A DNA stretch of 64,000 bases from Macrostomum lignano (GCA_002269645.1 NIVC01000469.1:124001-188000); one strand, 5' to 3'; numbered from the stretch's first letter, positions 3,001 through 44,990 are shown. Notes: generated by a model from the letters alone, not told the origin. Translations and numbers: made by a program.

Positions 3001-5530
3001 ACAGTGAGACTGATGGACACTGAGACTGATAAACAGTGAGACTGATGGACACTGAGACTGATAAACAGTGAGACTGATGGACACTGAGACTGATGGACAC
3101 TCAGACTGATGGACACTCAGACTGATGGACACTGAGACTGATGGACACTGAGACTGATGGACACTGAGACTGATGGACACTGAGACTGATGGACACTGAG
3201 ACTGATGGACACTCAGACTGATGGACACTCAGACTGATGGACACTCAGACTGATGGACACTGAGACTGATAAACAGTGAGACTGATGGACACTGAGACTG
3301 ATGGACACTGAGACTGATGGACACTCAGACTGATGGACACTCAGACTGATGGACACTGAGACTGATGGACACTGAGACTGATAAACAGTGAGACTGATGG
3401 ACACTGAGACTGATAAACAGTGAGACTGATGGACACTGAGACTGATAAACAGTGAGACTGATGGACACTGAGACTGATGGACACTGAGACTGATGGACAC
3501 TCAGACTGATGGACACTGAGACTGATAAACAGTGAGACTGATGGACACTGAGACTGATAAACAGTGAGACTGATGGACACTGAGACTGATGGACACTCAG
3601 ACTGATGGACACTGAGACTGATGGACACTGAGACTGATAAACAGTGAGACTGATGGACACTCAGACTGATGGACACTCAGACTGATGGACACTCAGACTG
3701 ATGGACACTGAGACTGATAAACAGTGAGACTGATGGACACTGAGACTGATGGACACTCAGACTGATGGACACTCAGACTGATGGACACTCAGACTGATGG
3801 ACACTGAGACTGATGGACACTGAGACTGATAAACAGTGAGACTGATAAACAGTGAGACTGATGGACACTGAGACTGATGGACACTGAGACTGATGGACAC
3901 TCAGACTGATGGACACTGAGACTGATAAACAGTGAGACTGATGGACACTGAGACTGATGGACACTCAGACTGATGGACACTGAGACTGATGGACACTGAG
4001 ACTGATAAACAGTGAGACTGATGGACACTCAGACTGATGGACACTCAGACTGATGGACACTGAGACTGATGGACACTGAGACTGATGGACACTCAGACTG
4101 ATGGACACTGAGACTGATAAACAGTGAGACTGATGGACACTCAGACTGATGGACACTGAGACTGATGGAAACTGAGACTGATAAACAGTGAGACTGATGG
4201 ACAATCAGACTGATGGACACTCAGACTGATGGACACTGAGACTGATGGACACTGAGACTGATAAACAGTGAGACTGATGGACACTCAGACTGATGGACAC
4301 TCAGACTGATGGACACTCAGACTGATGGACACTCAGACTGATGGACACTGAGACTGATGGACACTGAGACTGATGGACACTGAGACTGATAAACAGTGAG
4401 ACTGATAAACACTGAGACTGATGGACACTGAGACTGATGGACACTGAGACTGATGGACACTGAGACTGATGGACACTGAGACTGATAAACAGTGAGACTG
4501 ATGGACACTCAGACTGATGGACACTCAGACTGATGGACACTGAGACTGATGGACACTGAGACTGATAAACAGTGAGACTGATGGACACTCAGACTGATGG
4601 ACACTCAGACTGATGGACACTCAGACTGATGGACACTCAGACTGATGGACACTGAGACTGATGGACACTGAGACTGATGGACACTGAGACTGATAAACAG
4701 TGAGACTGATAAACACTGAGACTGATGGACACTGAGACTGATGGACACTCAGACTGATGGACACTCAGACTGATGGACACTGAGACTGATGGACACTCAG
4801 ACTGATGGACACTGAGACTGATAAACAGTGAGACTGATAAACACTGAGACTGATAAACAGTGAGACTGATAAACACTGAGACTGATAAACACTGAGACTG
4901 ATAAACACTGAGACTGATAAACACTGAGACTGATAAACACTGAGACTGATAGACACTGAGACTGATAAACACTGAGACTGATGGATACTGAGACTGATAA
5001 ACAGTGAGACTGATAGACACTGAGACTGATAAACACTGAGACTGATGGATACTGAGACTGATAAACACTGAGACTGATGGACACTGAGACTGATAAACAC
5101 TGAGACTGATAAACAGTGAGACTGATAAACACTGAGACTGATAAACACTGAGACTGATAAACAGTGAGACTGATGGACACTGAGACTGATAGACACTGAG
5201 ACTGATGGACACTGAGACTGATGGACACTGAGACTGATGGACACTGAGACTGATGGACACTGAGACTGATGGACACTGAGACTGATAGACACTGAGACTG
5301 ATGGACACTGAGACTGATGGACACTGAGACTGATAGACACTGAGACTGATGGACACTGAGACTGATAGACACTGAGACTGATGGACACTGAGACTGATGG
5401 ACACTGAGACTGATGGACACTGAGACTGATAGACACTGAGACTGATGGACACTGAGACTGATGGACACTGAGACTGATAGACACTGAGACTGATGGACAC
5501 TGAGACTGATGGACACTCAGACTGTTGGAC
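1..5530. repeat. 16-bp minisatellite array (GAGACTGATGGACACT / GAGACTGATAAACAGT variants), open at the window start
   Basis: Directly visible 16-bp period with a few recurrent variants (TGGA/TAAA/TAGA, CACT/CAGT, GAGA/CAGA). It explains the MSISLSVHQSQCPSV-type ORFs. Confidence 0.98.
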
Positions 5531-5533
5531 ATT

Positions 5534-6149
5534 CAGACAAATAAGACAGGCAGACAAATAAGACAGGCAGACAAATAAGACATTCAGACAAATAATTGCA
5601 GACAAATAAGACAGGCAGACAAATAAGACAGGCAGACAAATAAGACAGGCAGACAAATAAGACAGGCAGACAAATAAGACAGGCAGACAAATAAGACAGG
5701 CAGACAAATAAGACAGGCAGACAAATAAGACAGGCAGACAAATAAGACAGGCAGACAAATAAGACAGGCAGACAAATAAGACAGGCAGACAGATAAGACA
5801 GGCAGACAAATAAGACAGGCAGACAAATAAGACAGGCAGACAAATAAGACAGGCAGACAAATAAGACAGGCAGACAAATAAGACAGGCAGACAAATAAGA
5901 CAGGCAGACAGATAAGACAGGCAGACAAATAAGACAGGCAGACAAATAAGACAGGCAGACAAATAAGACAGGCAGACAAATAAGACAGGCAGACAAATAA
6001 GACAGGCAGACAAATAAGACAGGCAGACAAATAAGACAGGCAGACAAATAAGACAGGCAGACAGATAAGACAGGCAGACAAATAAGACAGGCAGACAAAT
6101 AAGACAGGCAGACAAATAAGACAGGCAGACAAATAAGACAGGCAGACAA
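5534..6149. repeat. 17-bp minisatellite (CAGACAAATAAGACAGG)n
   Basis: Near-perfect 17-bp period; the antisense ORF repeats every 17 aa (3x17 nt). Confidence 0.97.
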
Positions 6150-6796: not shown

Positions 6797-7313
6797 CTCC
6801 CTCTCGCACGCTTCCGCCTCTTCTCCTCTTAATGCTTCTCCATCTGATCTGATGAGCCAGAGCTCTCAGCCTCCCTCCCCATCTCCCCAGACAATGGGAT
6901 GAGGCGAAGGGAAACCAACGAGGGAGGGATTTTTCCAGCAACGTGAGCCTGCTATTGTGAGCTGGCCTCGGGAGGAAGGAAGAAAGGAAGCGAGGCTTCA
7001 AGAGCGCAAATTGATGGATAAAGACCAGCGATGAATGACCGCAAGCTGCCGTCTGAACCTCACGGCCTGAGCCTGCGGGTCCCAGCCGCTCGGTTGGGAA
7101 GAAACTATTTCTTGGGCTGGAGCTTCCAAAGCTTGAATTTCTTGTGTAGTTTATTCTAATACATTGTGTGCACAATGCATTAAGCCAGCCCAGCTCCCGT
7201 GCAGCTGAATGCCTCAGTTTATCGTCTTGTAGGCTGTGGGCTTCTGGGCTGCTTGCTCTTCATCACTGCGCCTTCTTTACTGAGTAAACTATTGTACTGC
7301 TTTTCTCTGGGCC

Positions 7314-9850
<2,537 letters not shown>

Positions 9851-9859
9851 TAGTGTTCT

Positions 9860-12800
9860 ACTGTCTGTGTGTTTACGTGGACTTTTTGGAAGTTCAGTAG
9901 CCTCGTTAGCTGGACCAACCGGTGTAGGTAGACCACTTAGGTGGACCACCAAATAATTTTGTCTCTGGTGGGGTTAAGACGTTGATGAGGATCTCACATT
10001 AATGTCAGGCGGGTCAAGAAAGGCTTAAGCAATTTTGGGATGTCTAGCATGGATTTTTCCAAAGTTATTTGCATTTCAGTTTAGCTGGACCTCCAGCCTG
10101 GTCTACCTAAACCGAGCGAGTCTGGTCCACGTAAACCGAAAAATTTTAGAAAATTTTTCGAAAATCGTCTGTTTGTGTCTGTTTGTGTCTGTTTGTGTCT
10201 GTTTGTGTATAGCAGTTATTAAGCATAGATTCAATGCAAAACTGAATTTTTTACAGATCATTACCTTACGAACAAAGGGCTATGTTGGCATCATATTATG
10301 ACCGCTACTGGCTTTAAAACAATATGCGTTCAGTTCTTTGACATTCAAGTAGGTGCGCAGGTTAATTAAAAATTCTGAAACCTCGTATGCGAAATGAATT
10401 TGATACAGTAAACTTTAAACTCCATTTAATTAGCTCAGTTCCAGCAATTCCGGTATCGTACTCTGAGCACAGACTCACAGAGTAAGACACCAACGTAAAG
10501 AAATCCAATTCGCTAACCATATCAAACGATAAAGACTCCGAGACAAGAAAGATATTTAAGTGAAGCTTAAATAGTATTCTTCAATGACTTCTCAAGAACT
10601 CCCAGTGGTCCTTGATAGCCACACTGTGTAAATGCGAATTTCTAAGGCTCTACCATTACACAAGAAGAAAATAGCAACTTCATGAATTAAGTGCTTGCCA
10701 ATTCTATCCTAAACACTATGGGATATCCTGTTCTATCCTCCTCCAATGTTGGAAGAAGAAGATCCTAAGCTGCAGCCTTTCAAGTGCAAAGTTGAAGATG
10801 CAATTTACCTAATTGAAAAGGACAATTCATACATGTACATGCAAAAGATTTGATCAAGAGGACGCAATTAAGAAGGGCCTTTTAGCTAGCGATCGGGTCT
10901 CTGACTCTCTAGCAAAAGGTCGACTTGATTGCGGTCCCAGTAAAACTAAGAACGCATTAACAGTCAGCCTAACACTCACTGTCTGTTTGGTCCACGTAAA
11001 CACATGTGCAGGAGTATAGGGTTGGAACAGACAGACAGACAGACCTCCCTTTCTATAATTGGCTGGTTAACACTTAGGAGGATAGATCCACCCCAACAAT
11101 GGGACCGACCGCAGCCAATAGGAAACCCGCAAGCGTTCTGAAGGTAAGACAGTGGAGAGAGGGATATATAATGTCTAAGCGGGTGGTCCACGTAAACCAT
11201 GGCGTAGTGAGACCAGACACAGACAGTTTAAAAGAAAGTACTTATAATCCATACTATACAACTCTAAAGGATTGCAATTGTATAGATTAGAACGGTTTTT
11301 TATACTTAATAGGTCTAATGTTAATCCTTACTCCAAGTTTCATCCATATATAAATTTATTGTGCCAAAAACTGTAATCTACAACCAAGATATGATGACCC
11401 GCAAAAAAGGACGCCAAGCCTAAAATAAAAACTAAAAAAACACCGTCGCAAAAAGCCACAGCGAAATCGAAGAAGCCGCATCGCCTGGTGAAAATCATCA
11501 GTCTGCTCGCAAATCCGTCGACACCAAGTCCAGAAAAGTGAGTTTCGTTTGATGATCTCAAAGTAGCTAGCTGCAGGCCTGCAACTCAATTGCTGTAGAG
11601 AAGCTGGTCCACCTAACCTACAGACACAACTGAATCAGCTCTCTCAGTCTGTTTGAGGCTTTGGCTCTCAGAAGGTGGTCCACCTAACCTACAGACACAA
11701 CTCGAACAGATTTCTCTGTCTGTTTGAGGCTCTGGCTCTCAGAGCCGCCGAGAAAGTTTAGTGCCGAGAATGCTTCAGTTTGTTAGAATGCAATCAGAAC
11801 AGATTCCTAGAAAGTGAGCTAGTCCAGCATCGAGGTAGAACATCTGGATGTGTAACGAGAGGCTCTCGGAGATTCCTGGCTCAGATTATCGCCTAGAAGT
11901 GCTGTGGAGTAGCTGGTCCACCTAACCTACAGACACAACTCGAACAGATTTCTCTGTCTTTTTAGGGCTCTGGCTCTTAGGTGGTCCACATAACCTACAG
12001 ACACAACTGAAGCAGCTCTCTCAGTCTGTTTGAGGCTTTGGCTCTCGGTAGCTGGTCCACCTAACCTACAGACACAACTCGAACAGATTTCTCTGTCTGT
12101 TTAAGGCTCTGGCTCTCAGAGCCGCCGAGAAAGTTTAGTGCAGAAATGCTTCAGTTTGTTAGAATGCAATCAGAACAGATTCCTAGAAAGTGAGCTAGTC
12201 CAGCATCAAGGCAGAACATCTGGATGTGTAACGAAAGTCTCTCGGAGACTCCTGGCTCAGATTATCGCCTAGAAGTGCTTTGGAGTAGCTGGTCCACCTA
12301 ACCTACAGACACAACTCGAACAGATTTCTCTGTCTGTTTGAGGCTCTGGCTCTTAGAGCCGCCGAGAAAGTTTAGTGCCGAGAATGCTTCAGTTTGTAGA
12401 ATGCAATCAGAACAGATTCCTAGAAAGTGAGCTAGTCCAGCATCAAGGCAGAACATCTGGATGTGTAACGAGAGGCTCTCGGAGATTCCTGGCTCAGATT
12501 ATCGCCTAGAAGTGCTGTAGAATAGCTGGTCCACCTAACCTACAGACACAACTCGAACAGATTTCTCTGTCTGTTTGAGGCTCTGGCTCTCAGAGCCGCC
12601 GAGAAAGTTTAGTGCCGAGAATGCTTCAGTTTGTTAGAATGCAATCAGAACAGATTCCTAGAAAGTGAGCTAGTCCAGCATCAAGGCAGAACATCTGGAT
12701 GTGTAACGAGAGGCTCTCGGAGATTCCTGGCTCAGATTATCGCCTAGAAGTGCTGTAGAATAGCTGGTCCACCTAACCTACAGACACAACTCGAACAGAT

Positions 12801-15800
12801 TTCTCTGTCTGTTTGAGGCTCTGGCTCTCAGAGCCGCCGAGAAAGTTTAGTGCCGAGAATGCTTCAGTTTGTTAGAATGCAATCAGAACAGATTCCTAGA
12901 AAGTGAGCTAGTCCAGCATCAAGGCAGAACATCTGGATGTGTAACGAGAGGCTCTCGGAGATTCCTGGCTCAGATTATCGCCTAGAAGTGCTGTAGAATA
13001 GCTGGTCCACCTAACCTACAGACACAACTCGAACAGATTTCTCTGTCTGTTTGAGGCTCTGGCTCTCAGAGCCGCCGAGAAAGTTTAGTGCCGAGAATGC
13101 TTCAGTTTGTTAGAATGCAATCAGAACAGATTCCTAGAAAGTGAGCTAGTCCAGCATCAAGGCAGAACATCTGGATGTGTAACGAAAGTCTCTCGGAGAT
13201 CCTGGCTCAGATTATCGCCTAGAAGTGCTTTGGAGTAGCTGGTCCACCTAACCTACAGACACAACTCGAACAGATTTCTCTGTCTGTTTAGGCTCTGGCT
13301 CTTAGGTGGTCCACATAACCTACAGACACAACTGAAGCAGCTCTCTCAGTCTGTTTGAGGCTTTGGCTCTCAGTAGCTGGTCCACCTAACCTACAGACAC
13401 AACTCGAACAGATTTCTCTGTCTGTTTAAGGCTCTGGCTCTCAGAGCCGCCGAGAAAGTTTAGTGCAGAAAATGCTTCAGTTTGTTAGAATGCAATCAGA
13501 ACAGATTCCTAGAAAGTGAGCTAGTCCAGCATCAAGGCAGAACATCTGGATGTGTAACGAAAGTCTCTCGAGACTCCTGGCTCAGATTATCGCCTAGAAG
13601 TGCTGTGGAGTAGCTGGTCCACCTAACCTACAGACACAACTCGAACAGATTTCTCTGTCTGTTTGAGGCTCTGGCTCTTAGAGCCGCCGAGAAAGTTTAG
13701 TGCCGAGAATGCTTCAGTTTGTAGAATGCAATCAGAACAGATTCCTAGAAAGTGAGCTAGTCCAGCATCAAGGCAGAACATCTGGATGTGTAACGAGAGG
13801 CTCTCGGAGATTCCTGGCTCAGATTATCGCCTAGAAGTGCTGTAGAATAGCTGGTCCACCTAACCTACAGACACAACTCGAACAGATTTCTCTGTCTGTT
13901 TGAGGCTCTGGCTCTCAGAGCCGCCGAGAAAGTTTAGTGCCGAGAATGCTTCAGTTTGTTAGAATGCAATCAGAACAGATTCCTAGAAAGTGAGCTAGTC
14001 CAGCATCAAGGCAGAACATCTGGATGTGTAACGAAAGTCTCGGAGACTCCTGGCTCAGATTATCGCCTAGAAGTGCTTTGGAGTAGCTGGTCCACCTAAC
14101 CTACAGACACAACTCGAACAGATTTCTCTGTCTGTTTGAGGCTCTGGCTCTTAGAGCCGCCGAGAAAGTTTAGTGCCGAGAATGCTTCAGTTTGTAAGAA
14201 TGCAATCAGAACAGATTCCTAGAAAGTGAGCTAGTCCAGCATCAAGGCAGAACATCTGGATGTGTAACGAGAGGCTCTCGGAGATTCCTGGCTCAGATTA
14301 TCGCCTAGAAGTGCTGTAGAATAGCTGGTCCACCTAACCTACAGACACAACTCGAACAGATTTCTCTGTCTGTTTGAGGCTCTGGCTCTCAGAGCCGCCG
14401 AGAAAGTTTAGTGCCGAGAATGCTTCAGTTTGTTAGAATGCAATCAGAACAGATTCCTAGAAAGTGAGCTAGTCCAGCATCAAGGCAGAACATCTGGATG
14501 TGTAACGAGAGGCTCTCGGAGATTCCTGGCTCAGATTATCGCCTAGAAGTGCTGTAGAATAGCTGGTCCACCTAACCTACAGACACAACTCGAACAGATT
14601 TCTCTGTCTGTTTGAGGCTCTGGCTCTCAGAGCCGCCGAGAAAGTTTAGTGCCGAGAATGCTTCAGTTTGTTAGAATGCAATCAGAACAGATTCCTAGAA
14701 AGTGAGCTAGTCCAGCATCAAGGCAGAACATCTGGATGTGTAACGAGAGGCTCTCGGAGATTCCTGGCTCAGATTATCGCCTAGAAGTGCTGTAGAATAG
14801 CTGGTCCACCTAACCTACAGACACAACTCGAACAGATTTCTCTGTCTGTTTGAGGCTCTGGCTCTCAGAGCCGCCGAGAAGTTTAGTGCCGAGAATGCTT
14901 CAGTTTGTTAGAATGCAATCAGAACAGATTCCTAGAAAGTGAGCTAGTCCAGCATCAAGGCAGAACATCTGGATGTGTAACGAAAGTCTCTCGGAGACTC
15001 CTGGCTCAGATTATCGCCTAGAAGTGCTTTGGAGTAGCTGGTCCACCTAACCTACAGACACAACTCGAACAGATTTCTCTGTCTGTTTAGGGCTCTGGCT
15101 CTTAGGTGGTCCACATAACCTACAGACACAACTGAAGCAGCTCTCTCAGTCTGTTTGAGGCTTTGGCTCTCAGTAGCTGGTCCACCTAACCTACAGACAC
15201 AACTCGAACAGATTTCTCTGTCTGTTTAAGGCTCTGGCTCTCAGAGCCGCCGAGAAAGTTTAGTGCAGAAAATGCTTCAGTTTGTTAGAATGCAATCAGA
15301 ACAGATTCCTAGAAAGTGAGCTAGTCCAGCATCAAGGCAGAACATCTGGATGTGTAACGAAAGTCTCTCGGAGACTCCTGGCTCAGATTATCGCCTAGAA
15401 GTGCTGTGGAGTAGCTGGTCCACCTAACCTACAGACACAACTCGAACAGATTTCTCTGTCTGTTTGAGGCTCTGGCTCTTAGAGCCGCCGAGAAAGTTTA
15501 GTGCCGAGAATGCTTCAGTTTGTAAGAATGCAATCAGAACAGATTCCTAGAAAGTGAGCTAGTCCAGCATCAAGGCAGAACATCTGGATGTGTAACGAGA
15601 GGCTCTCGGAGATTCCTGGCTCAGATTATCGCCTAGAAGTGCTGTAGAATAGCTGGTCCACCTAACCTACAGACACAACTCGAACAGATTTCTCTGTCTG
15701 TTTGAGGCTCTGGCTCTCAGAGCCGCCGAGAAAGTTTAGTGCCGAGAATGCTTCAGTTTGTTAGAATGCAATCAGAACAGATTCCTAGAAAGTGAGCTAG

Positions 15801-18800
15801 TCCAGCATCAAGGCAGAACATCTGGATGTGTAACGAAAGTCTCTCGGAGACTCCTGGCTCAGATTTTCGCCTAGAAGTGCTGTGGAGTATCTGGTCCACC
15901 TAACCTACAGACACAACTCGAACAGATTTCTGTCTGTTTGAGGCTTTGGATCTCAGAGCCGCCGAGAAAGTTTAGTGCCGAGAATGCTTCAGTTTGTTAG
16001 AATGCAATCAGAACAGATTCCTAGAAAGTGAGCTAGTCCAGCATCAAGGCAGAACATCTGGATGTGTAACGAGAGGCTCTCGGAGATTCCTGGCTCAGAT
16101 TATCGCCTAGAAGTGCTGTAGAATAGCTGGTCCACCTAACCTACAGACACAACTCGAACAGATTTCTCTGTCTGTTTGAGGCTCTGGCTCTCAGAGCCGC
16201 CGAGAAAGTTTAGTGCCGAGAATGCTTCAGTTTGTTAGAATGCAATCAGAACAGATTCCTAGAAAGTGAGCTAGTCCAGCATCAAGGCAGAACATCTGCA
16301 TGTGTAACGAGAGGCTCTCGGAGATTCCTGGCTCAGATTATCGCCTAGAAGTGCTGTAGAATAGCTGGTCCACCTAACCTACAGACACAACTCGAACAGA
16401 TTTCTCTGTCTGTTTGAGGCTCTGGCTCTCAGAGCCGCCGAGAAAGTTTAGTGCCGAGAATGCTTCAGTTTGTTAGAATGCAATCAGAACAGATTCCTAG
16501 AAAGTGAGCTAGTCCAGCATCAAGGCAGAACATCTGCATGTGTAACGAGAGGCTCTCGGAGATTCCTGGCTCAGATTATCGCCTAGAAGTGCTGTAGAAT
16601 AGCTGGTCCACCTAACCTACAGACACAACTCGAACAGATTTCTCTGTCTGTTTGAGGCTCTGGCTCTCAGAGCCGCCGAGAAAGTTTAGTGCCGAGAATG
16701 CTTCAGTTTGTTAGAATGCAATCAGAACAGATTCCTAGAAAGTGAGCTAGTCCAGCATCAAGGCAGAACATCTGGATGTGTAACGAGAGGCTCTCGGAGA
16801 TTCCTGGCTCAGATTATCGCCTAGAAGTGCTTTGGAGTAGCTGGTCCACATAACCTACAGACACAACTGAAGCAGCTCTCTCAGTCTGTTTGAGGCTTTG
16901 GTTCTCAGTAGCTGGTCCACCTAACCTACAGACACAACTCGAACAGATTTCTCTGTCTGTTTAAGGCTCTGGCTCTCAGAGCCGCCGAGAAAGTTTAGTG
17001 CCGAGAATGCTTCAGTTTGTTAGAATGCAATCAGAACAGATTCCTAGAAAGTGAGCTAGTCCAGCATCAAGGTAGAAAATCTGGATGTGTAACGAGAGGC
17101 TCTCGGAGATTCCTGGCTCAGATTATCGCCTAGAAGTGCTGTGGAGTAGCTGGTCCACCTAACCTACAGACACAACTCGAACAGATTTCTCTGTCTGTTT
17201 AGGGCTCTGGCTCTTAGGTGGTCCACATAACCTACAGACACAACTGAAGCAGCTCTCTCAGTCTGTTTGAGGCTTTGGCTCTCAGTAGCTGGTCCACCTA
17301 ACCTACAGACACAACTCGAACAGATTTCTCTGTCTGTTTAAGGCTCTGGCTCTCAGAGCCGCCGAGAAAGTTTAGTGCAGAAAATGCTTCAGTTTGTTAG
17401 AATGCAATCAGAACAGATTCCTAGAAAGTGAGCTAGTCCAGCATCAAGGCAGAACATCTGGATGTGTAACGAAAGTCTCTCGGAGACTCCTGGCTCAGAT
17501 TATCGCCTAGAAGTGCTGTGGAGTAGCTGGTCCACCTAACCTACAGACACAACTCGAACAGATTTCTCTGTCTGTTTGAGGCTCTGGCTCTCAGAGCCGC
17601 CGAGAAAGTTTAGTGCCGAGAATGCTTCAGTTTGTAAGAATGCAATCAGAACAGATTCCTAGAAAGTGAGCTAGTCCAGCATCAAGGCAGAACATCTGGA
17701 TGTGTAACGAGAGGCTCTCGGAGATTCCTGGCTCAGATTATCGCCTAGAAGTGCTGTAGAATAGCTGGTCCACCTAACCTACAGACACAACTCGAACAGA
17801 TTTCTCTGTCTGTTTGAGGCTCTGGATCTCAGAGCCGCCGAGAAAGTTTAGTGCCGAGAATGCTTCAGTTTGTTAGAATGCAATCAGAACATATTCCTAG
17901 AAAGTGAGCTAGTCCAGCATCAAGGCAGAACATCTGGATGTGTAACGAGAGGCTCTCGGAGATTCCTGGCTCAGATTATCGCCTAGAAGTGCTTTGGAGT
18001 AGCTGGTCCACCTAACCTACAGACACAACTCGAACAGATTTCTCTGTCTGTTTGAGGCTCTGGATCTCAGAGCCGCCGAGAAAGTTTAGTGCCGAGAATG
18101 CTTCAGTTTGTTAGAATGCAATCAGAACATATTCCTAGAAAGTGAGCTAGTCCAGCATCAAGGCAGAACATCTGGATGTGTAACGAGAGGCTCTCGGAGA
18201 TTCCTGGCTCAGATTATCGCCTAGAAGTGCTTTGGAGTAGCTGGTCCACCTAACCTACAGACACAACTCGAACAGATTTCTCTGTCTGTTTGAGGCTCTG
18301 GCTCTCAGAGCCGCCGAGAAAGTTTAGTGCCGAGAATGCTTCAGTTTGTTAGAATGCAATCAGAACATATTCCTAGAAAGTGAGCTAGTCCAGCATCAAG
18401 GCAGAACATCTGGATGTGTAACGAGAGGCTCTCGGAGATTCCTGGCTCAGATTATCGCCTAGAAGTGCTTTGGAGTAGCTGGTCCACATAACCTACAGAC
18501 ACAACTGAAGCAGCTCTCTCAGTCTGTTTGAGGCTTTGGTTCTCAGTAGCTGGTCCACCTAACCTACAGACACAACTCGAACAGATTTCTCTGTCTGTTT
18601 AAGGCTCTGGCTCTCAGAGCCGCCGAGAAAGTTTAGTGCCGAGAATGCTTCAGTTTGTTAGAATGCAATCAGAACAGATTCCTAGAAAGTGAGCTAGTCC
18701 AGCATCAAGGTAGAAAATCTGGATGTGTAACGAGAGGCTCTCGGAGATTCCTGGCTCAGATTATCGCCTAGAAGTGCTGTGGAGTAGCTGGTCCACCTAA

Positions 18801-21542
18801 CCTACAGACACAACTCGAACAGATTTCTCTGTCTGTTTAGGGCTCTGGCTCTTAGGTGGTCCACATAACCTACAGACACAACTGAAGCAGCTCTCTCAGT
18901 CTGTTTGAGGCTTTGGCTCTCAGTAGCTGGTCCACCTAACCTACAGACACAACTCGAACAGATTTCTCTGTCTGTTTAAGGCTCTGGCTCTCAGAGCCGC
19001 CGAGAAAGTTTAGTGCAGAAAATGCTTCAGTTTGTTAGAATGCAATCAGAACAGATTCCTAGAAAGTGAGCTAGTCCAGCATCAAGGCAGAACATCTGGA
19101 TGTGTAACGAAAGTCTCTCGGAGACTCCTGGCTCAGATTATCGCCTAGAAGTGCTTTGGAGTAGCTGGTCCACCTAACCTACAGACACAACTCGAACAGA
19201 TTTCTCTGTCTGTTTGAGGCTCTGGCTCTTAGAGCCGCCGAGAAAGTTTAGTGCCGAGAATGCTTCAGTTTGTAAGAATGCAATCAGAACAGATTCCTAG
19301 AAAGTGAGCTAGTCCAGCATCAAGGCAGAACATCTGGATGTGTAACGAGAGGCTCTCGGAGATTCCTGGCTCAGATTATCGCCTAGAAGTGCTGTAGAAT
19401 AGCTGGTCCACCTAACCTACAGACACAACTCGAACAGATTTCTCTGTCTGTTTGAGGCTCTGGATCTCAGAGCCGCCGAGAAAGTTTAGTGCCGAGAATG
19501 CTTCAGTTTGTTAGAATGCAATCAGAACATATTCCTAGAAAGTGAGCTAGTCCAGCATCAAGGCAGAACATCTGGATGTGTAACGAGAGGCTCTCGGAGA
19601 TTCCTGGCTCAGATTATCGCCTAGAAGTGCTTTGGAGTAGCTGGTCCACCTAACCTACAGACACAACTCGAACAGATTTCTCTGTCTGTTTGAGGCTCTG
19701 GATCTCAGAGCCGCCGAGAAAGTTTAGTGCCGAGAATGCTTCAGTTTGTTAGAATGCAATCAGAACATATTCCTAGAAAGTGAGCTAGTCCAGCATCAAG
19801 GCAGAACATCTGGATGTGTAACGAGAGGCTCTCGGAGATTCCTGGCTCAGATTATCGCCTAGAAGTGCTTTGGAGTAGCTGGTCCACCTAACCTACAGAC
19901 ACAACTCGAACAGATTTCTCTGTCTGTTTGAGGCTCTGGCTCTCAGAGCCGCCGAGAAAGTTTAGTGCAGAAAATGCTTCAGTTTGTTAGAATGCAATCA
20001 GAACAGATTCCTAGAAAGTGAGCTAGTCCAGCATCAAGGTAGAACATCTGGATTTGTAACGAGAGGCTCTCGGAGATTCCTGGCTCAGATTATCGCCTAG
20101 AAGTGCTGTGGAGTAGCTGGTCCACCTAACCTACAGACACAACTCGAACAGATTTCTCTGTCTGTTTGAGGCTCTGGATCTCAGAGCCGCCGAGAAAGTT
20201 TAGTGCCGAGAATGCTTCAGTTTGTTAGAATGCAATCAGAACATATTCCTAGAAAGTGAGCTAGTCCAGCATCAAGGCAGAACATCTGGATGTGTAACGA
20301 GAGGCTCTCGGAGATTCCTGGCTCAGATTATCGCCTAGAAGTGCTTTGGAGTAGCTGGTCCACCTAACCTACAGACACAACTCGAACAGATTTCTCTGTC
20401 TGTTTGAGGCTCTGGATCTGAGGTGGTCCACATAACCTACAGACACAACTGGAACAGATTTCTGTGTCTGTTTGATTGTCAGTTAATTTTATTTTCTACC
20501 TTTGTAGGAGCCTGTGGTTGATTTTGTTCGCCTGAGCTCGACGAGACTGACTGCGTTTCACCGAGATGAAGGTTAAAACGAACTGTAAAAGAAGATTTAA
20601 ACCACTAATTGACGAGAAATATAGAAAGGTTCATCATAGAGCTGAGCTGACGAAAGTGGATTCGATGGCTGAGTAAGCTGAAATTCGTGAGAGAGGCAAT
20701 GACAGATCAATAACAGAAGCGGTCCCGGACCACGGAGGCAGGAAAAGTCCAGGAGAATATTTCGTAGAAAAAATAAGAAGATTAAGCCATCATCTGCGTG
20801 AACGAAAAGATGAAAGTCGGTAAAATGATTGGCTTATCATATGATTGCTCACCAACTCATTCAGTATAATAGGACTGATGTAGTCAAATCAATTTAATTT
20901 CAGTTTTAGTAACTTTTGTCGTTATTAAAAATGCCCTTCAACTTCTTGTAGGCTCGTACTCGGATGACCTTTTTAACTAATGGAATCTTACGTTTGTTAA
21001 CATGTATTTGAAGCATACATTTTGACCTAAATTAGTTTTAATGAGTTTACAGTTAGTATTTGATATGATTCTGTATTTATTTTCAAAATGCTTTATTTTC
21101 ATTCACCTTCTTGTATTCACGCGACGCAACTAACTAATGCGATCGTACATTTGTTTAACCCGATTAACCCGATTAGTAATGCTAAATAAATTGGTTTGAA
21201 CTTGGGATATTTTCATTAAATGACGTCGTAACCCTTTTATCTGTTCTTTTTGAGAATTTCTGTTTTAATTAGTTCAAAAGAACAGTTTAAAGCAATAAAT
21301 TTTCTACAACGAAAGAGGTCTAACTAAACCAACTGTTTTTTTGCGGTCCACCTAACCCGGTCCCCAAAACGTAGTTAGTGAACCACCACAGTTTCCCCGA
21401 ACTGGCTATTCCGTCAAGTTAACAAAAAGATAACCCTAGCTAGCCTTTCGCGTTGTCAAAACAGACTCTATTTTTTAACCGGAATTGCGTGGTCCACGTA
21501 ACGCATTAACATAACTCAGGTCCCGCTAAACACACAGACAGT
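9860..21542. mobile_element. Putative non-autonomous TIR (foldback-like) DNA element carrying an internal satellite
   Basis: 9860-9884 and 21518-21542 are inverted repeats (21/25, outer 16 bp perfect). Both ends carry clusters of GGTCC-N3-TAA(A/C)C-type motifs. No transposase ORF. TSD not confirmed (TA on the left, TC on the right). Confidence 0.55.
11606..20474. repeat. Satellite of 238-bp monomers interspersed with ~68-71-bp short monomers, higher-order organised
   Basis: About 48 copies (counted by eye) of GGTCCAC(C/A)TAACCTACAGACACAAC. Long-unit period is 238 bp (e.g. 12528, 12766, 13004). Short A and B units recur at about 11915/11982, 13240/13307, 15040/15107, 17150/17217 and 18789/18857. 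Confidence 0.97.
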
Positions 21543-23138
21543 CGTAAGAGTGTCTGTCTGTCTGTCTGTTTGCCCGGCTGCCCGCTCTTTGCCTTGTGCA
21601 GGTTGAGATAAGGGAGTGCTAGATAGATAGAAGAGAGGCCATGAGAGACGCGTGGAGATGCTGAGATAGAGCTGATGAAATGTGACTGACAGCGCATTAA
21701 CGCGAGCTGTATCTGGGTTACCCTCCGGCGCTCCCGGTGGGCAGCTGGCAGGACTGGCATTCGCGTGATAGCGCTGAGAGAGAAGCGCGGGGTGAGGGTT
21801 GCGAAAGACAGTGGCTGGGCAAGAAGACTGTGTAAGGACTTTTAGCGGCGCAGTCGGGTCTAAATCACTTCTGCGGAAGTCGGTTGCGGGGCACTTCTAT
21901 ATAATTAATTCTCGCAGACACAAGCAGGCACGGTAAACACACTGTACTAACTATTAGTATAAATCTGCTGATTTTTCACACATTGTACAGCGGCATATTA
22001 AGCCTTAGCCTCAATAATCATGAGAAGAAATGTTCTTTACAAATCAATTTTTACTGCTCAAATAGGATAGAATGCATATCCATATTCACGATCGGTCGAA
22101 GAAGATTTTAGATTCAGTCGAGCTTTTCTGTCATCGAAGCTCCGTTGAATGAGGCATCAATTAGAAATGTCTGTAATTAAAGCTCATTTCCTCTCCCCCG
22201 GGAGGAGGGGCAGAATTCGAAGAAAACGGCAAAACCGCATTGCGCTCCCGACTCCGTTCTATTCCGCAGCGGATGAAGAAGGCCCTTCTTCCGGCCCGCG
22301 TCTCCGGCCCGGGTTCCTCCGCGCCTATTTGCATAATCTGAAAGAAGAAAGTTACAGACTGGGGGAAGAAAACTGACAAAGGCCAATGCTATGCCTTCCT
22401 TCCATTGTAAGTCTGCATGCTGCGATGAATTATGGTTCGCAGAAATTAAAGATCTAATTAGTTTGCCCCATTAATTTGGCTGCGGCTTGCCGGGTCTTCT
22501 TGCCCGATGGGACTTACCAAATCCAGCTTCTCCGCCTCACTTGCTCCAAGAAAAAATTCATCTTTGAAGCACTTTTCGTTTCGGGTTATTTTTAAACAAA
22601 GACGAAGAAGTCTTTGGTCTGGTTATTTACAGAATAGCTTGGTTTTGAGCTGCTCACCTCCTTGTGGTGCCAAGCGGGCAGTTGGTCATGTGACCTGTTC
22701 GCTCAAGGAGAGAGGGGTCACATCCGCAATATTGATCTCGCGCTGTGAACATCTGGCGAACAACTCCGACTCACGACTCACGATGCACCTCCTCAAACAT
22801 CATCCTAGTGAAATGCTCGCCGGGTTACAAAGGTCGGGAGGTTGCAGCTTGAGTAGCTTCATGCCTAACTGCGATAACAGGGCCCCAAGAGTTGCAGCCG
22901 TCAGATTAGAGTAGCTTGCAGAGTGCCACGAGTCACGGCGAGAAAAAGCGAGAGGCGAGACAAGACTTACAGAATGGTATTTTCTATATTTTTCTGTGAG
23001 CCGACAGCGCGCGAACTTCGAGTTTAAACAATGCTATTTTATAGTAGACACAATTCAACGAGCTTGACAGCAGGGCAGTGGCGTTGAAGTTTTCCGCGAA
23101 GCCATGGCTTTGCGGAATAGTCGAATCAACGCAGACGA

Positions 23139-23728
23139 TCACTGCTTGGTTTCCGCCGACATTCGCTGCGCTCCGAACGGGTCCTCGCAGTTGCGGCTTC
23201 GCGAGAGACTTCTTGAACCGTGGCCTCCAGTCGCTGCGGCTGCTGCGGCGGCTGCTGCTGCTCCCCCGGCCGCGGCTGCGGCCTTGCCGCTGCAACTGCT
23301 GCCGCCGCCTCCGCCGCTGCCACTGACGGCTGCGCCGCCGGCCTCCGCGGGCGCCCGGAGCTGCAGTCGAATTGCTTGGCCCTCGCCAGCGGCTGCAGCC
23401 TCCATCTCTACCCTTCGGCGGGCTGCGGAGCGTCTGGCGCCGCCCCGATGGCAGACGATGACGCAGTGCCGGTTGCCGCGGCCCCGTCGGCAGGCTCGCA
23501 TCATGATGCTGCGGAATGCGCGGCGGAACTTGAGCGACATCAAGTTGTAGAGGATCGGGTTCACGATTGACGAGCCGAAGAACAGCAGGCCGGAGATGTG
23601 GAACAGGTTCTGGTTGACCCACGTGGCCACGCAGGACTGGCAGTAGGCGTCCTTGGAGACCACGTCAGCCAGAATGCGGGACAGGTGAAACGGAGCGTAG
23701 CAGATGAAGAAGGCAAGAACGATGCCCA
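23139..23728 (-). CDS. PRXamide-type GPCR, exon 3 (TM6, TM7, Ala/Gly-rich C-tail)
   Basis: TTCCAG|TG acceptor (phase 1) gives V-GIVLAFFICYAPFHLSR and NPILYNLMSLKFRRAF; TGA stop at 23139. The spliced CDS of 1365 nt is in frame (454 aa). Confidence 0.9.
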
Positions 23729-24256
23729 CTGGAATTTCGGTTAGAGGATGGATTTTGACTCAACTGTCTCTGCTGTGACAGAAATTTGAACCTAAAACAC
23801 GAGGACCAACTGTACAAACTGGATGAATTCACTTTATCCTATTTTCTTCCCCATTTTACACTGCTTCGTAAAAAACCTTTTTGTGCGTCTACAAGGTCCA
23901 GGTAAACAGTTGCTTCATACAGTGGGAGACTGCCGCCCCCTCCCGAAAATCCTACGAAGTACCTCGACCCTCCGCGTACCCAATCTCTTTGCCACTCTGC
24001 GCTGGTTTTCTGTTGCTTTTCGAATTCCCATCAGCAAGCGAGATGGGAAAAAAGCTGTTCGGCAATTCTCTCTCCCAGCCTCTCTAGTTGCTCTCAGCTG
24101 CATTGAGGCCAGAAATCTATAGTTAGAAGCGATCCAAGTAGGGTACTGCTTTAGCCTGCGCATTCCAAAGTTACTCCTAGCCAGCAGAGCCAAACAAATT
24201 AGTGGAGTCAATATTTTTTTATCCAACGTGTTTGAACCTTTCGTGGGCCATCATAA

Positions 24257-24377
24257 TGGCATCCCAGCAACTCCCCATTGAGCCAATTGGCATCTCAGCA
24301 ACTCCCCATTGAGCCAATTGGCATCTCAGCAACTCCTCATTGAGCGAATTGGCATCAGCAACTCCTCATTGAGCCAG
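24257..24377. repeat. 31-bp tandem repeat, ~4 copies, in GPCR intron 2
   Basis: TGGCATCTCAGCAACTCCCCATTGAGCCAAT repeated, with decay. Confidence 0.85.
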
Positions 24378-25656
24378 AAAAGTGCGCATTTCAAGAAATT
24401 GGACGTCTAATGAACGAACTAAAAGCAGTGAGCCGGTGACAGAGAACAAGATGAAGCTGCCGCAAAATCCACTGTTGACAGTAACTACTAGTTGTCAAAG
24501 GCGTACGAATGCGACTTCATTTATGAAGATTGACTGCAGTTTTCTTCCTCTATTCAGTCTTCATTCTCGCCAAAGCTAGACTTAAAAAGCACACCGGATG
24601 TATGCCTGGGGTTTTTTGCAGCGTCAACACTTTAAAAATATCCAGGTCCTGTTGGTAGTGGTACAAAACTGACTAGCTTGGGCTGGCAAGTAGTGCGCAT
24701 TCGGACAAAACTTTTAGCCAAGGTTGGTACGAAGGCTGCTGCAAAAGTTTCTGGACTGCGTCTACTGTGTGAAAAACAGGAATGTCTAAATGAGCTGAGA
24801 TTTTAGCCGCAACTCCTTGCACATCTGCTCTACTGAATGGAATTGTAAAAATGCACGCATGGGTTTCTTAAAATTCACTATCACTGTCACTGTCCCTGCC
24901 GTTGACATGCCAGACTAAAGTGCCATTGGCTCTCCTTTGATCCCATAGTGCGAAGGAGTTTTCGGTCAATACACTGCTACGTTTGGGTGACTGAAAAATC
25001 AGCAGCTTAAAAGTGCACAAGTTGCTGTGTGCCTCGCCCACAGATTCTTTATTACCTCCGATGAGTCAATTCTAGCATTCGCTATTGTATTTAGCGGCCG
25101 TCCCCGAGGCCCCGAAAACCCAGGGGTTAGGGCCACAGACACCAGCTGCTGCTGCTAATGTCTTGAGAGCAGCAGAGGCTATAGTCTATGGTCAAAACCC
25201 CGGGGTGTTCGCGCTGACGCCAGGCGGGTGGAGTGGCCCATCTAGGCAATATACGCTCGTAGAATCTGTGACCTCGCCTGCACTGCATTCGCTTGACTTC
25301 TCATCGTTTTCCCTACGATTTTCAATCAGCAAGTTGTCTATGGCAAACATCGTTTATAGAACCCATGCGTACATATTTAGAATTTTTATAAGTTTAGCTG
25401 CAGCATATCGAATTCTTCTGCAGTTTCACAATTCAGTAGAGCAGCTGTACAAAGAGTTGCCTCTAAAAGTTCAACTCTTTTAGTAGACATTCCTGTTGTT
25501 CACTGGTCGGTAAACGCAGTCCGGAAACCTTTGCAGGTTTCTGAGACAGATGCGTCCTGCGATGTCATCATAAACATCCCCATATGGTTATGATTAACAT
25601 AATGAAATGTAGTGAATCTGTGAACATTTAAGACGTTGCCCGCCACTGCAACTCAC

Positions 25657-25900
25657 CGAGCAATTTGAGAAGCGTCTTCCTGCCCTGCGCTTTTTGCACA
25701 GCCCGCCGATCGAAGCTGGCATTGCTGTGGCCCGACCCGGCGGAGTCTTTGCGCTGTTTGAGCGACCGGTGGACGGCAGCGCCGATGCGGACGTACATGT
25801 ACAAGATGATAATCATCGGGCAGACGAACAGCAGCAGAGAGGACACCAGGAATGAGTAGGCAATCCGCTTTGGCTTCACAACTTCGCACATTCGAGAGTT
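25657..25900 (-). CDS. PRXamide-type GPCR, exon 2 (ECL2 Cys, TM5, ICL3)
   Basis: NSRMCEVVKPKRIAYSFLVSSLLLFVCPMIIILYMYVRIG...KTLLKLL. Donor G|GTGAGT, phase 1. The acceptor CTGCAG was chosen for phase 0 and its exact position is uncertain. Confidence 0.8.
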
Positions 25901-26622
25901 CTGCAGCACCCTGGGGCTGAACTGAGTTGAGGTGTCGTTTCTAACCAGAACCTGACGGTGTGTTTCATAATAAATATTTGTTCCTGTTTTCCAGGTTGCT
26001 GTTGATACGATTGAACAAAACATTCCTTTCACGATGAAATGGAAATATTTATGAGCATTCGGATTATCTTGACTAAGTAAAAAAGGGGCTGCTTTTGATG
26101 AAATATGGTTGAATAATTATTGCAGTTGCAGCGGTGGGACATGCTGATAAAACGAATTCGAAGCTCTTCTCAATAAAATATTTAGAAACTATATCTTAAC
26201 AAAATTCGAACAGAGCTGCAAAAGAATAGTTAATTTCGGCTGTTATTTAACTGCCCTGTCGTTCATGACACAGCTAATAAATTTTACTGCCGTCTTTACA
26301 TTCTGGACTAGGAGCAACTTGTCTGCTTTTTCTTCATTTATTATTTATCCCAAGCTGTGCGCCGAAAAGCTATGAAACAATGTTCCTTCAGGTTCTGAAC
26401 CAGAGCTATTCAAAAGCAGTTGAGTAGCAAAGTGCAGCAAAGGGTTTCATTGTGTTTCTGTATAGTGTGGAGTGGATTTGTTTCTTAATGCATCCTACAG
26501 AATCCAATTGTGTCCACTGGGGCAGTTCTCTTAGGAAATTTAGGATGCAGAATACGGGAAGCTGTGAGGGATTTAGGAACCGTACATTACAAGTAAGCTA
26601 CACGTAGGGGGCTCAAATTCAC

Positions 26623-27153
26623 CTCAAATCCAAGCTGCGAGCTCATGACGGTCGATAAGCAGGCCGATGCCACCCAGATGCTAGCGATAACCTTCACCGG
26701 TCTGGCTAGGCCTCGGCCTCTGCGCACCTTCATGGGGTGGCAGATGGCGCAGTACCGTTCGGCCGTGAGCGCGGTGACCGTGAGCGTGGAGCAGTAGGTG
26801 CACATCTCGGCCAGGAAGCCGGACCCGACGCACATGGCCAGGCTGTTAGGGAAGGGGTACCGGTGCCAGTGCGTGAGCAGCTCGTACGGCAGCCGGGACA
26901 CCAGCACTACCAAGTCTGAGACGCTCAAATTGAACAGGTAGAAATTGGTGGCAGTTCTCATAAATTGGGTGCGCGCAATCACTAGGCAGGTTATTAAATT
27001 GCCAAACAGGCCGAGAGCAAAGATGACGGCCAGAGCGGTGGTCAGGGCGGTCAGCTGAGGCAGCGTGTAGGTGGTCGGCTGCCCCCACTGCTGCTCAATG
27101 CACTGCTTGTCAGTGGCATTGTCGTCGCACGCGCAAGACTGATACGAAATCAT
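26623..27153 (-). CDS. PRXamide-type (neuromedin U / capa / pyrokinin-like) neuropeptide GPCR, exon 1 (TM1-TM4)
   Basis: GLFGNLITCLVI, MRTATNFYLFNLSVSDL, LTAERYCAICHP (ERY motif). ATG at 27153; GAG|GTGAAT donor, phase 0. Confidence 0.9.
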
Positions 27154-29283: not shown

Positions 29284-30231
29284 TCAAGGTCCCAGCGGCT
29301 TCATCTCGGTCACATGCCGCCGAATGACTGCCGTGCCGCGTTGCAGCGTCAGGGTGTCGTCGCTGACTGCCTTGACAAGCCAAGGCCGCGGGTCGAACGG
29401 ACAGCGCAGCTTCGCCTTGCCGCGGTTTCTGAGCAGCACGTGGGCGCCTGCCAGGATGCCGTGTGGCGCAGCCGATCGCCGCGTGTCGGCCGCCTTGCGC
29501 ATCGCCTGCTTGTAGCCGCAGTCGTGGCGCTGCAGCTGCCGTCCGGAGCTGCCGGTTTGCTTTGTCAGGCCGGATGGCAGGATGTCGCCGGTCTCTCGGT
29601 TAAACATGAGGTCGTTGGGCGTGCAGTCGTGCGGTCACAGAGTTGCGGTATCCGAGCAGCCACTCGTGAATCGCCTGCCGCCAGTCCTTGCCGTCGGCCG
29701 TGGCGGCGTTGATGGCCTTGTTGAGGCTGCGGTTGAAGCGCTCCACCTCGCCGTTCGCCGCCGGGTAGAGCGGGGTGATCCTGCGCTGTCGAACCCTGAG
29801 GCCGTCCAGAAACACACTGAATTCCTCGCTCGTGAAGTAGGTGGCGTTGTCCGTAGTGATCTGCTGCGGCACCCCGAAGCGGCTGAATGAGGCCATGACG
29901 CAGTTGATGACGCTGGCGCTGGTGAGGCTTCGCACCACGTAGAGGTCCGGGTAGCGGCTGAAGTAGTCCAACAAGACCACTACGTTCTCGCCCGTAGGGA
30001 ATGGTCCACACACGTCGACGCTGAGCGATTGCCAGGCCCCAACGGAAGCGGAGTCGGCTGCATCGGCGGTTGTTTAACGGCGCCGTCGGTCCGGGCCGCT
30101 TGGCACGTGAGGCAGTTAGTGACGACCGCCTCGACCTGCTTGGTCATGCCAGGCCACCAGATCTTACGCTACAGTCGGTCGCACGTCCTCTTCTGTCCGA
30201 GGTGGCCCTGGTGCGCTAAACCGATTGTCAG
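29284..30231 (-). pseudogene. Gypsy integrase remnant (HHCC, DDE core, GPY/F-like tail) with stops and frameshifts
   Basis: HQGHLGQKRTCDRL*RKIWWPG...CLTC; VDVCGPF; ITTDNATYF; NGEVERFNR; KLRCPFDPRPW. Two in-frame TAG codons and at least two frameshifts. Confidence 0.88.
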
Positions 30232-44896: not shown

Positions 44897-44913
44897 GTGA
44901 GTGTAACAGTGCC

Positions 44914-44990
<77 letters not shown>

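What the first reader, a model, noticed from the sequence alone, without database searches (positions are those of the whole stretch)
9860..21542. 11.7-kb inverted-repeat-bounded element whose interior is a stack of ~48 copies of its own end motif
Seen: the left end ACTGTCTGTGTGTTTACGTGGACTT (9860-9884) and the right end AGGTCCCGCTAAACACACAGACAGT (21518-21542) are inverted repeats (21/25, outer 16 perfect). A motif GGTCC-N3-TAA(A/C)C clusters near both ends (reverse: 9871, 9905, 9924, 9937, 10079; forward: 10100, 10124, 10933, 10989, 11186, 21317, 21345, 21491, 21519). Every monomer of the internal 8.9-kb satellite begins GGTCCACCTAACCTACAGACA, about 18/22 identical (one gap) to the end consensus GGTCCACGTAAACACACAGACA. 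Known: foldback/Galileo-type TIRs, CACTA and hAT subterminal regions carry iterated transposase-binding motifs, and some non-autonomous elements seed satellites. Inference: this is an undescribed non-autonomous DNA-element family that grows by iterating end-like modules, each followed by a passenger segment, giving a repeat-spacer-like architecture.
Basis: partly seen in the sequence, partly recalled or inferred. Interest (0 to 1): 0.8.

Follow-up and report, generated by a model that had tools for sequence, protein, structure and literature searches.

The report
Non-coding transposon copy carrying a satellite
An 11.7-kb non-coding block with inverted-repeat ends sits inside a (CTGT)n microsatellite of an unidentified animal genome and looks like a defective DNA transposon whose internal 238-bp segment was amplified into an ordinary 8.9-kb satellite, a known kind of transposon-satellite composite.

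Summary
The two ends are a 23-nt inverted repeat with the outer 16 nt perfect. The motif GGTCCNNNTAAMC occurs 55 times in the window, 54 of them inside the block. The block holds 48 tandem units.

New evidence shows the block is an insertion. The left (CTGT)n array carries a private variant, AGTGT+CTGTCTG. It occurs 25 times there and once more directly right of the block. This gives a candidate 5-bp target duplication (AGTGT). The interior is also AT-rich against GC-rich flanks.

The "passenger" is the same 173 bp in all 33 long units, and the other 15 units are short and lack it, so nothing resembles repeats with varying spacers. The array contains 1.6-1.8-kb internal duplications at 98.9-99.5% identity. 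That is normal satellite growth by unequal exchange of one motif-bearing segment.

No coding capacity or known RNA family was found. No second copy was found in the window or in the collections scanned, so family status, superfamily and mobility are untested.

The closest known kinds are DINE-1/HINE (Helentron) elements and Tetris-type transposons with internal repeats. I rate it a new member of a known kind, of modest interest.

The parts
7313..9856 (+). (CTGT)n microsatellite, the left part of the interrupted target. It carries the private variant TTAGTGT 29 times.
9852..9856 (+). AGTGT, left copy of the candidate 5-bp target-site duplication
   Evidence: in 28 of 29 cases TTAGTGT is followed by C (25 by CTGTCTGTCTGT). 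Only this last one is followed by TCTACTG, which marks the break point.
9857..9859 (+). TCT, three terminal nucleotides outside the inverted repeat
9860..9884 (+). Left inverted repeat ACTGTCTGTGTGTTTACGTGGACTT. Its inner half is a reverse-strand motif copy (9871-9883).
9904..9947 (-). Three closely spaced reverse-strand motif copies (9904-9916, 9922-9934, 9935-9947)
10079..10136 (.). Point where motif orientation switches. A reverse copy at 10079-10091 faces forward copies at 10100-10112 and 10124-10136. The region 9920-9953 pairs with 10081-10114 as a 34-nt inverted repeat.
   Evidence: (I1)
10137..10160 (.). 24-nt AT-rich palindrome CGAAAAATTTTAGAAAATTTTTCG
   Evidence: z = -3.0 for 10070-10165
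10167..10208 (+). Internal (GTCTGTTTGT)x4.2 microsatellite-like tract
10933..11227 (+). Forward motif copies at 10933, 10989 and 11185. The copies at 10989-11044 and 11185-11227 look like right ends with a 17-25-nt filler between the motif and an ACAG-type tail. An (ACAG)x4.7 tract lies at 11026-11044.
   Evidence: a 15-nt run shared with the left end at 10989
11606..20475 (+). Satellite array of 48 units in the order SLSsL5SsL7SsL7sLSsL5sLSsL6Ss. There are 33 long units (a 65-bp head plus the same 173-bp tail) and 15 short units (head only, two subtypes).
20476..21316 (+). Unique AT-rich internal sequence (GC 29-42%) with no open reading frame and no repeat elsewhere in the window
21317..21531 (+). 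Right arm with four forward motif copies (21317, 21345, 21491, 21519)
21518..21542 (+). Right inverted repeat AGGTCCCGCTAAACACACAGACAGT
21543..21548 (+). CGTAAG, six terminal nucleotides outside the inverted repeat
21549..21573 (+). AGTGT (right copy of the candidate duplication) followed by (CTGT)4 TTTG, the remnant of the same microsatellite. It can also pair with the right repeat as a hairpin.
   Evidence: the only AGTGTCTGTCTG outside the left array; hairpin z = -3.0

Best explanation
The block from about 9857 to 21548 is one copy of a non-autonomous class II (DNA) transposable element. It inserted near the 3' end of a pre-existing (CTGT)n microsatellite and duplicated AGTGT.

Its ends are 23-25-nt inverted repeats whose inner half is a 13-nt motif, consensus GGTCCACSTAAAC. 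That motif is repeated in the subterminal regions: five copies in one orientation within the left 232 bp, and four in the other orientation within the right 226 bp. This is the layout expected of binding sites for the mobilising protein, but that role is inferred and not shown.

Later, one internal segment of about 238 bp that happened to include a motif copy was amplified in place by unequal exchange or replication slippage. This produced an 8.9-kb satellite with a higher-order structure, as happens throughout this tandem-repeat-rich genome.

What is shown: the insertion, the inverted repeat, the motif clustering and orientation, the array structure, and the absence of coding capacity.

What is inferred: mobility, a cut-and-paste mechanism with a 5-bp duplication, protein binding to the motif, and the order of events.
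For: Insertion:
- AGTGTCTGTCTG occurs 26 times in the window. Twenty-five are in the left array and one is at 21549, directly right of the block.
- The other (CTGT)n array, at 44913-45400, has none.
- Joining the flanks after removing one AGTGT gives GTCTTAGTGTCTGTCTG..., the array's standard variant (25 of 29 occurrences).
- Interior GC is 29-44%, against 51-60% in the flanks.

Ends:
- A 23-nt inverted repeat lies 3 and 6 nt from those independently defined boundaries.

Motif:
- 54 of 55 copies lie inside the block, against 0.06 expected, and they are oriented by arm.

Non-autonomous:
- No ORF of 110 aa or more.
- No Pfam match above its cut-off in the ten longest stop-to-stop frames.
- No Rfam match.

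Amplification in place:
- The tails are identical across long units, with 97.5% mean pairwise identity.
- Multi-unit duplications of 1638 bp (99.5%) and 1.8 kb (98.9%) are present.
- The motif copies outside the array are not degenerate monomers (nhmmer).
- About half the window is unrelated tandem arrays.
Against: - Only one copy exists in the data, so there is no second copy, no empty site and no autonomous partner. Mobility and family status are unproven.
- The inverted repeats are not exactly terminal. TCT on the left and CGTAAG on the right lie between them and the duplication.
- The outer half of the repeat (CTGTCTGTGTGT) resembles the host microsatellite and is in phase with it on the left. 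The exact left boundary is therefore arguable.
- Forward motif copies also occur in the left part (10100-11197), which is not a clean two-arm pattern.
- The two arms share nothing significant beyond the terminal 25 nt.
- The motif is no more conserved than the rest of the monomer by a meaningful margin: 0 of 13 columns vary against 27 of 225 elsewhere, and the chance of 0 is about 0.2.
Confidence: 0.55

Rival explanations
1. The block is a Helentron-derived non-autonomous element (HINE, DINE-1-like) moved by rolling-circle transposition. On this reading the inverted repeats are subterminal repeats, the true 3' end lies about 50 nt further right (near the TTT at 21589-21591) after a 3' stem-loop, there is no target duplication, and the central tandem repeats have expanded.
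For: The published HINE layout has these features (PMC4067079 read; PMC7492417 read):
- subTIRs 2-4 nt from the 5' end;
- a 3' subTIR 38-60 nt from the 3' end, followed by a palindrome;
- an internal 4-nt microsatellite, often GTCY or GTCK;
- central satellite-like repeats;
- T-rich boundaries.

Features seen here:
- The left repeat starts 3 nt after a T|T junction (GTGT|TCT).
- A GTCT-type tract lies at 10167-10208.
- The array is central.
- A hairpin follows the right repeat (z = -3.0).
Against: - The AGTGT duplication and the array-private signature on the right flank argue for a staggered-cut insertion whose right boundary is at 21548. On this rival they would be a coincidence of about 1 in 1000 for a given alignment (4^-5, my estimate).
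- GC rises to host level right after about 21570.
- The 3' stem is built from microsatellite sequence.
- HINE descriptions read here do not mention 14 dispersed copies of the subTIR core.
- The repeat complementary to the 5' subTIR is 242 nt away (I3). The published distance is 1-22 nt.
Confidence: 0.17
2. The block is not a mobile element. It is a satellite array with old unique flanks, where the 'ends' are two monomer-head-like sequences in opposite orientation produced by a local inversion or fold-back repair. The surrounding (CTGT)n would then have grown from ACAGACAG-type tracts that accompany the motif.
For: - Motif plus ACAG-type tail modules recur inside the block, at 10989, 11185 and in every monomer.
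- The right end plus its flank weakly resembles a monomer head (nhmmer E = 0.087).
- The right junction is a near-palindrome.
- The left repeat is in phase with the microsatellite.
Against: - The flanking motif copies are not recognisable monomers.
- The right repeat matches the left repeat 16 of 16 at its outer end. By my hand comparison it matches the local right flank at only 13 of 16.
- The right flank carries the left array's private AGTGT+CTGT signature in the same strand orientation. Outward growth from inverted ends would not produce that.
- There is a sharp GC contrast with the flanks.
Confidence: 0.13
3. The element family actively grows by adding end-like modules, each capturing a passenger segment, which gives a repeat-spacer-like structure.
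For: - Each unit contains one motif copy followed by ACAGACA, as at the ends.
- Internal right-end-like modules with different fillers exist at 10989 and 11185.
Against: - All long units share one and the same 173-bp tail, so there is no spacer diversity.
- Growth was by duplication of multi-unit blocks.
- The motif shows no extra conservation within the array.
Confidence: 0.05

Closest known systems
DINE-1 / HINE (non-autonomous Helentron) elements of insects, mites and molluscs, for example Cg_HINE carrying Cg170-type repeats in the Pacific oyster (PMC4067079, PMC7492417)
   Same: - It is non-coding.
- It has short inverted repeats a few nucleotides in from the 5' end.
- It has an internal GTCT-type microsatellite tract and a central satellite-like tandem array in a fixed orientation.
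- It is associated with microsatellites.
- A hairpin follows the 3' repeat.
   Different: - There is an apparent 5-bp target duplication, where HINEs make none.
- The 3' repeat is 0-6 nt from the inferred 3' boundary, not 38-60 nt.
- There are 14 dispersed copies of the repeat core.
- The array is far longer (48 units, 8.9 kb) than the short arrays typical of dispersed HINEs.
- No Helentron partner is known here.
Tetris, a foldback-type non-autonomous DNA transposon of Drosophila virilis whose TIR-internal 220-bp repeats seeded satellite arrays (PMC4079207)
   Same: - It is a non-autonomous DNA element.
- Tandem repeats of about 220-240 bp lie inside the element.
- The repeats have amplified to kb-size satellite-like arrays.
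   Different: - In Tetris the repeats lie within long inverted arms (foldback structure).
- Here the arms share only about 25 nt and the array runs in a single orientation between unique sequences.
Cut-and-paste DNA transposons with subterminal repeated binding motifs, such as Ac/hAT AAACGG repeats and En/Spm (CACTA) 12-bp TnpA sites (from my own knowledge, not checked here)
   Same: - It has terminal inverted repeats plus many short subterminal motif copies oriented by arm.
- It has a target-site duplication.
- It resembles non-autonomous deletion derivatives.
   Different: - The duplication length (5 bp perfect, or 8 bp at 5 of 8) and the terminal nucleotides fit neither hAT (8 bp) nor CACTA (3 bp, CACTA termini).
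- Motif copies extend more than 1.3 kb into the element.
- The superfamily cannot be assigned without a transposase.

Membership tests
Class II TIR (cut-and-paste) transposon, non-autonomous | Terminal inverted repeats at the insertion boundaries | tested here: met
   A 23-nt inverted repeat (16 nt perfect) lies 3 and 6 nt from boundaries that were defined independently by the broken microsatellite.
Class II TIR (cut-and-paste) transposon, non-autonomous | Target-site duplication of fixed length | tested here: inconclusive
   AGTGT occurs at 9852-9856 and 21549-21553, and removing one copy restores the array's standard variant. With a single copy, the length and its constancy cannot be checked.
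Class II TIR (cut-and-paste) transposon, non-autonomous | Multiple dispersed copies sharing the ends, and empty sites | not testable with these tools
   No second copy exists in the window. The organism is absent from the protein and DNA collections.
Class II TIR (cut-and-paste) transposon, non-autonomous | Autonomous partner encoding a transposase with the same ends | not testable with these tools
   The block has no coding capacity, and the source genome is not available.
HINE / DINE-1-like (Helentron non-autonomous) | A 5' subTIR 2-4 nt from the 5' terminus | tested here: met
   The repeat starts at 9860, 3 nt after the break at 9856/9857. The criterion is from PMC4067079.
HINE / DINE-1-like (Helentron non-autonomous) | A 3' subTIR 38-60 nt from the 3' terminus, followed by a short palindrome | tested here: inconclusive
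   A hairpin exists, but it uses the flanking (CTGT)4. The microsatellite signature and the GC shift place the boundary at about 21548-21570, not near 21590.
HINE / DINE-1-like (Helentron non-autonomous) | No target-site duplication, and insertion at TT or T-rich sites | tested here: not met
   A perfect 5-bp AGTGT duplication flanks the block. The left junction is T|T, but the target is a CTGT array.
HINE / DINE-1-like (Helentron non-autonomous) | An internal microsatellite plus central tandem repeats between the two end modules | tested here: met
   (GTCTGTTTGT)x4.2 lies at 10167-10208, (ACAG)x4.7 at 11026-11044, and the array at 11606-20475.
Foldback / Tetris-like elements | Long inverted arms built of tandem repeats | tested here: not met
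   Arm-to-arm alignment is no better than shuffled or real-sequence controls beyond the terminal 25 nt. All 48 array units are on the + strand.
   All 33 long units carry the same 173-bp tail at about 97.5% identity, and the 15 short units have none.

The most novel reading that the evidence does not exclude
Each monomer head (motif plus ACAGACA plus hairpin) could be a functional pseudo-end recognised by the family's transposase. The array and the internal right-end-like modules at 10989 and 11185 would then arise through repeated aberrant or alternative-end transposition, or replicative end-copying, and not through passive unequal exchange. That would make transposase-driven satellite genesis directly testable.
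Probability: 0.06. Interest if true: 0.7.

Novelty: new member of a known kind. Interest (0 to 1): 0.3.

Why it matters
If confirmed as a mobile family, this copy is a clean snapshot of a satellite being born inside a DNA transposon. The ends are intact, the insertion is datable within a microsatellite, and the array is young (97.5% identity) with visible block duplications.

Such composites are already documented in Drosophila (Tetris, DINE-1) and in bivalves (HINEs). The value is therefore as another example in an apparently unsampled animal lineage, not as a new principle.

The motif-rich array could matter functionally, as a sink for the mobilising protein or as a source of small RNAs. Nothing here tests that.

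Tried and rejected
1. Finding relatives.
- A degenerate end/monomer pattern scanned against metagenome contigs gave 120 loci. None is similar to the element by blastn, so they are chance hits.
- An exact monomer head in GTDB genome contigs gave 0 hits, and the end/monomer pattern in viral contigs gave 0 hits.
- Sequence strings searched in the literature returned only unrelated primers.

2. Identifying the organism.
- The GPCR C-terminal exon gave no hits.
- The HisRS exon gave a best identity of only 58%. No close relative is in the protein database, so orthologous or empty-site loci could not be fetched.

3. Degenerate-monomer flanks. nhmmer profiles of the head, the tail and the whole unit against the array-masked window gave only E = 0.087 or worse. 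Rejected.

4. Long degenerate inverted arms. Rejected.

5. Known structured RNA or ribozyme in the monomer or flanks. None found, even at E up to 1.

6. Coding remnants. The only Pfam match is below its cut-off (Ig_GP210, 16.8 bits against a cut-off of 27).

7. TA duplication (Tc1/mariner). The flanks read TA on the left and TC on the right, and the termini do not start CAGT. Not supported.

8. Extra conservation of the motif inside the array. Not significant.


Full report
CONTEXT

The window is animal DNA. It holds three exons of a rhodopsin-family GPCR (23139-27153, minus strand), a decayed LTR-retrotransposon fragment with zinc knuckle, protease, RNase H and integrase (29600-31476, minus strand), and histidyl-tRNA synthetase exons (59745-62213, minus strand). 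The best database match to the HisRS exon is only 58% identical. The organism and its close relatives are therefore absent from the collections I could search. About half of the window consists of some 30 unrelated tandem arrays (the fraction is my sum of the listed coordinates).

THE OBSERVATION

It is real.
- 9860-9882 and 21520-21542 form a 23-nt, 87% complementary inverted repeat. The outer 16 nt are perfect.
- The 23-mer with up to 3 mismatches, and the 17-mer with up to 2, match only these two sites.
The 10-mer CTGTGTGTTT bridges the microsatellite-like and unique halves, and it occurs nowhere else on either strand.
- The left end's next-best inverted match anywhere in the window is a 15-nt run at the internal site 10989.
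- The motif GGTCCNNNTAAMC occurs 55 times against 0.06 expected, with 54 copies inside the block.
- Outside the array there are 14 copies: five on the reverse strand within the left 232 bp, and nine forward from 10100 onward, four of them within the right 226 bp.

THE BLOCK IS AN INSERTION

This is new evidence.
- The 2.5-kb (CTGT)n array left of the block carries a private variant, TTAGTGT, 29 times. In 25 cases it is followed by CTGTCTGTCTGT. The last occurrence, at 9850, is instead followed by TCT and the left repeat.
- The 12-mer AGTGTCTGTCTG occurs 26 times in the window: 25 in that array and once at 21549, six nucleotides beyond the right repeat.
- The window's other (CTGT)n array (44913-45400) lacks the variant.
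- So one microsatellite was split. AGTGT is present on both sides, and deleting the block plus one AGTGT restores the array's standard sequence.
- The interior unique DNA has 29-44% GC. The flanks have 51-60%.
- The inverted repeats lie 3 nt (TCT) and 6 nt (CGTAAG) inside these independently defined boundaries.
- An insertion with a short direct duplication and near-terminal inverted repeats is the signature of a DNA transposon.
- An 8-bp reading of the duplication (CTTAGTGT / AAGAGTGT, 5 of 8 matching) is also possible.

CONTENT OF THE BLOCK

- There is no ORF of 110 aa or more.
- The ten longest stop-to-stop frames have no Pfam match above cut-off.
- There is no Rfam match even at E up to 1.
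- The unique parts have no other copy in the window.
- The block is therefore non-autonomous at best.

THE ARRAY

- 11606-20475 holds 48 motif-bearing units in the order SLSsL5SsL7SsL7sLSsL5sLSsL6Ss.
- The 33 long units are a 65-bp head plus one and the same 173-bp tail. The 15 short units are heads of two subtypes without a tail.
- Long units are 97.5% identical on average.
- Multi-unit blocks are duplicated: 16843-18480 against 18481-20118 is 99.5% identical over 1638 bp, and 13241-15039 against 15040-16842 is 98.9%.
- This is ordinary satellite growth by unequal exchange. It is not an architecture of repeats with varying spacers.
- 'Every monomer begins with the motif' only means that each unit contains one copy. 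At about one motif per 200 bp of non-array element sequence, that is unsurprising.
- The motif is not detectably more conserved than the rest of the unit: 0 of 13 columns vary against 27 of 225 elsewhere, and the chance of 0 is about 0.2.
- Profile searches show that the flanking motif copies are not eroded monomers.
- The two arms share nothing significant beyond the terminal 25 nt.

WHICH KIND OF ELEMENT

Published HINE/DINE-1-like (Helentron) elements have these features (PMC4067079; PMC7492417):
- subTIRs 2-4 nt from the 5' end;
- a 3' subTIR 38-60 nt from the 3' end, followed by a palindrome;
- an internal, often GTCY-type, microsatellite;
- central satellite-like repeats;
- no duplication, and TT targets.

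The overall layout here is strikingly similar. There is a GTCT-type tract at 10167-10208, a central array, and a hairpin after the right repeat with z = -3.0. Against membership, the AGTGT duplication, the microsatellite signature and the GC shift place the 3' boundary next to the right repeat. I therefore favour a cut-and-paste element with subterminal binding motifs and keep the Helentron reading as the main rival.

Tetris (PMC4079207) is the closest analogue for TIR-associated repeats becoming a satellite, but it has a foldback structure, and this block does not.

LIMITS

There is one copy, no empty site and no partner element. Mobility, family status, duplication length and motif function are inferences. 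The left boundary is blurred because the outer repeat half resembles the microsatellite and is in phase with it.

VERDICT

The transposon reading is reasonably supported. The 'module-iteration / repeat-spacer' mechanism is not supported. It is a new member of a known kind of transposon-satellite composite, of modest interest.

Noticed in passing
window 1-64000: About half of the window is tandem repeats. Some 30 unrelated arrays have periods from 4 to 335 bp, roughly one per kb from 32 kb onward. Several lie between HisRS exons (60103-60714, 61121-61670). This density is unusual for a gene-bearing region.
   Followed up: partly
window 11115-11202, 11538-11543, 20500-20508, 21185-21190: Gene-like signals bracket the satellite inside the element. 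There is a CCAAT box (11115-11119), TATATAA (11165-11171) and ACCATGG about 30 nt downstream (11196-11202, overlapping the motif copy at 11185). A lysine-rich open frame (11398-11538) ends at a GTGAGT donor (11538-11543). A polypyrimidine tract plus TAG acceptor lies just after the array (20506-20507), and AATAAA is at 21185-21190. The array may sit in the intron of a decayed or non-coding transcription unit. No Pfam match.
   Followed up: partly
window 61674-62213 (-) and 59745-60383 (-): These are histidyl-tRNA synthetase exons (tRNA-synt_His and HGTP_anticodon domains). The best protein-database identity is only 58%, so the source organism has no close relative in the searched collection.
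   Followed up: partly
window 29600-31476 (-): This is an LTR-retrotransposon fragment with zinc knuckle, aspartyl protease, RNase H and integrase matches. No reverse-transcriptase domain was reported between protease and RNase H, which suggests an internally deleted copy in a 60% GC stretch.
   Followed up: no
window 23895-23907 (+): A single isolated copy of the motif (GGTCCAGGTAAAC) lies 2.3 kb right of the element, between GPCR exons, with no end-like tail and no neighbouring copies.
   Followed up: yes
window 44913-45400: A second (CTGT)n array is interrupted twice by the same GC-rich insert of about 60 bp (about 45066-45121 and 45181-45231), so a microsatellite-plus-insert block was duplicated. 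It lacks the TTAGTGT variant of the first array.
   Followed up: partly
window 1-6149: A 5.5-kb array of the 16-mer GACTGATGGACACTGA abuts a 0.6-kb array of the 17-mer CAGACAAATAAGACAGG. Both are CAGAC/GACAG-flavoured, like the element's ACAGACA tracts. Their relationship to the element is unexplored.
   Followed up: no
window 7313-9856: The (CTGT)n array has its own higher-order pattern. The spacings of the TTAGTGT variant recur (for example 36, 8, 24 starting at 8278 and again at 8838), which indicates block duplications within the microsatellite.
   Followed up: partly
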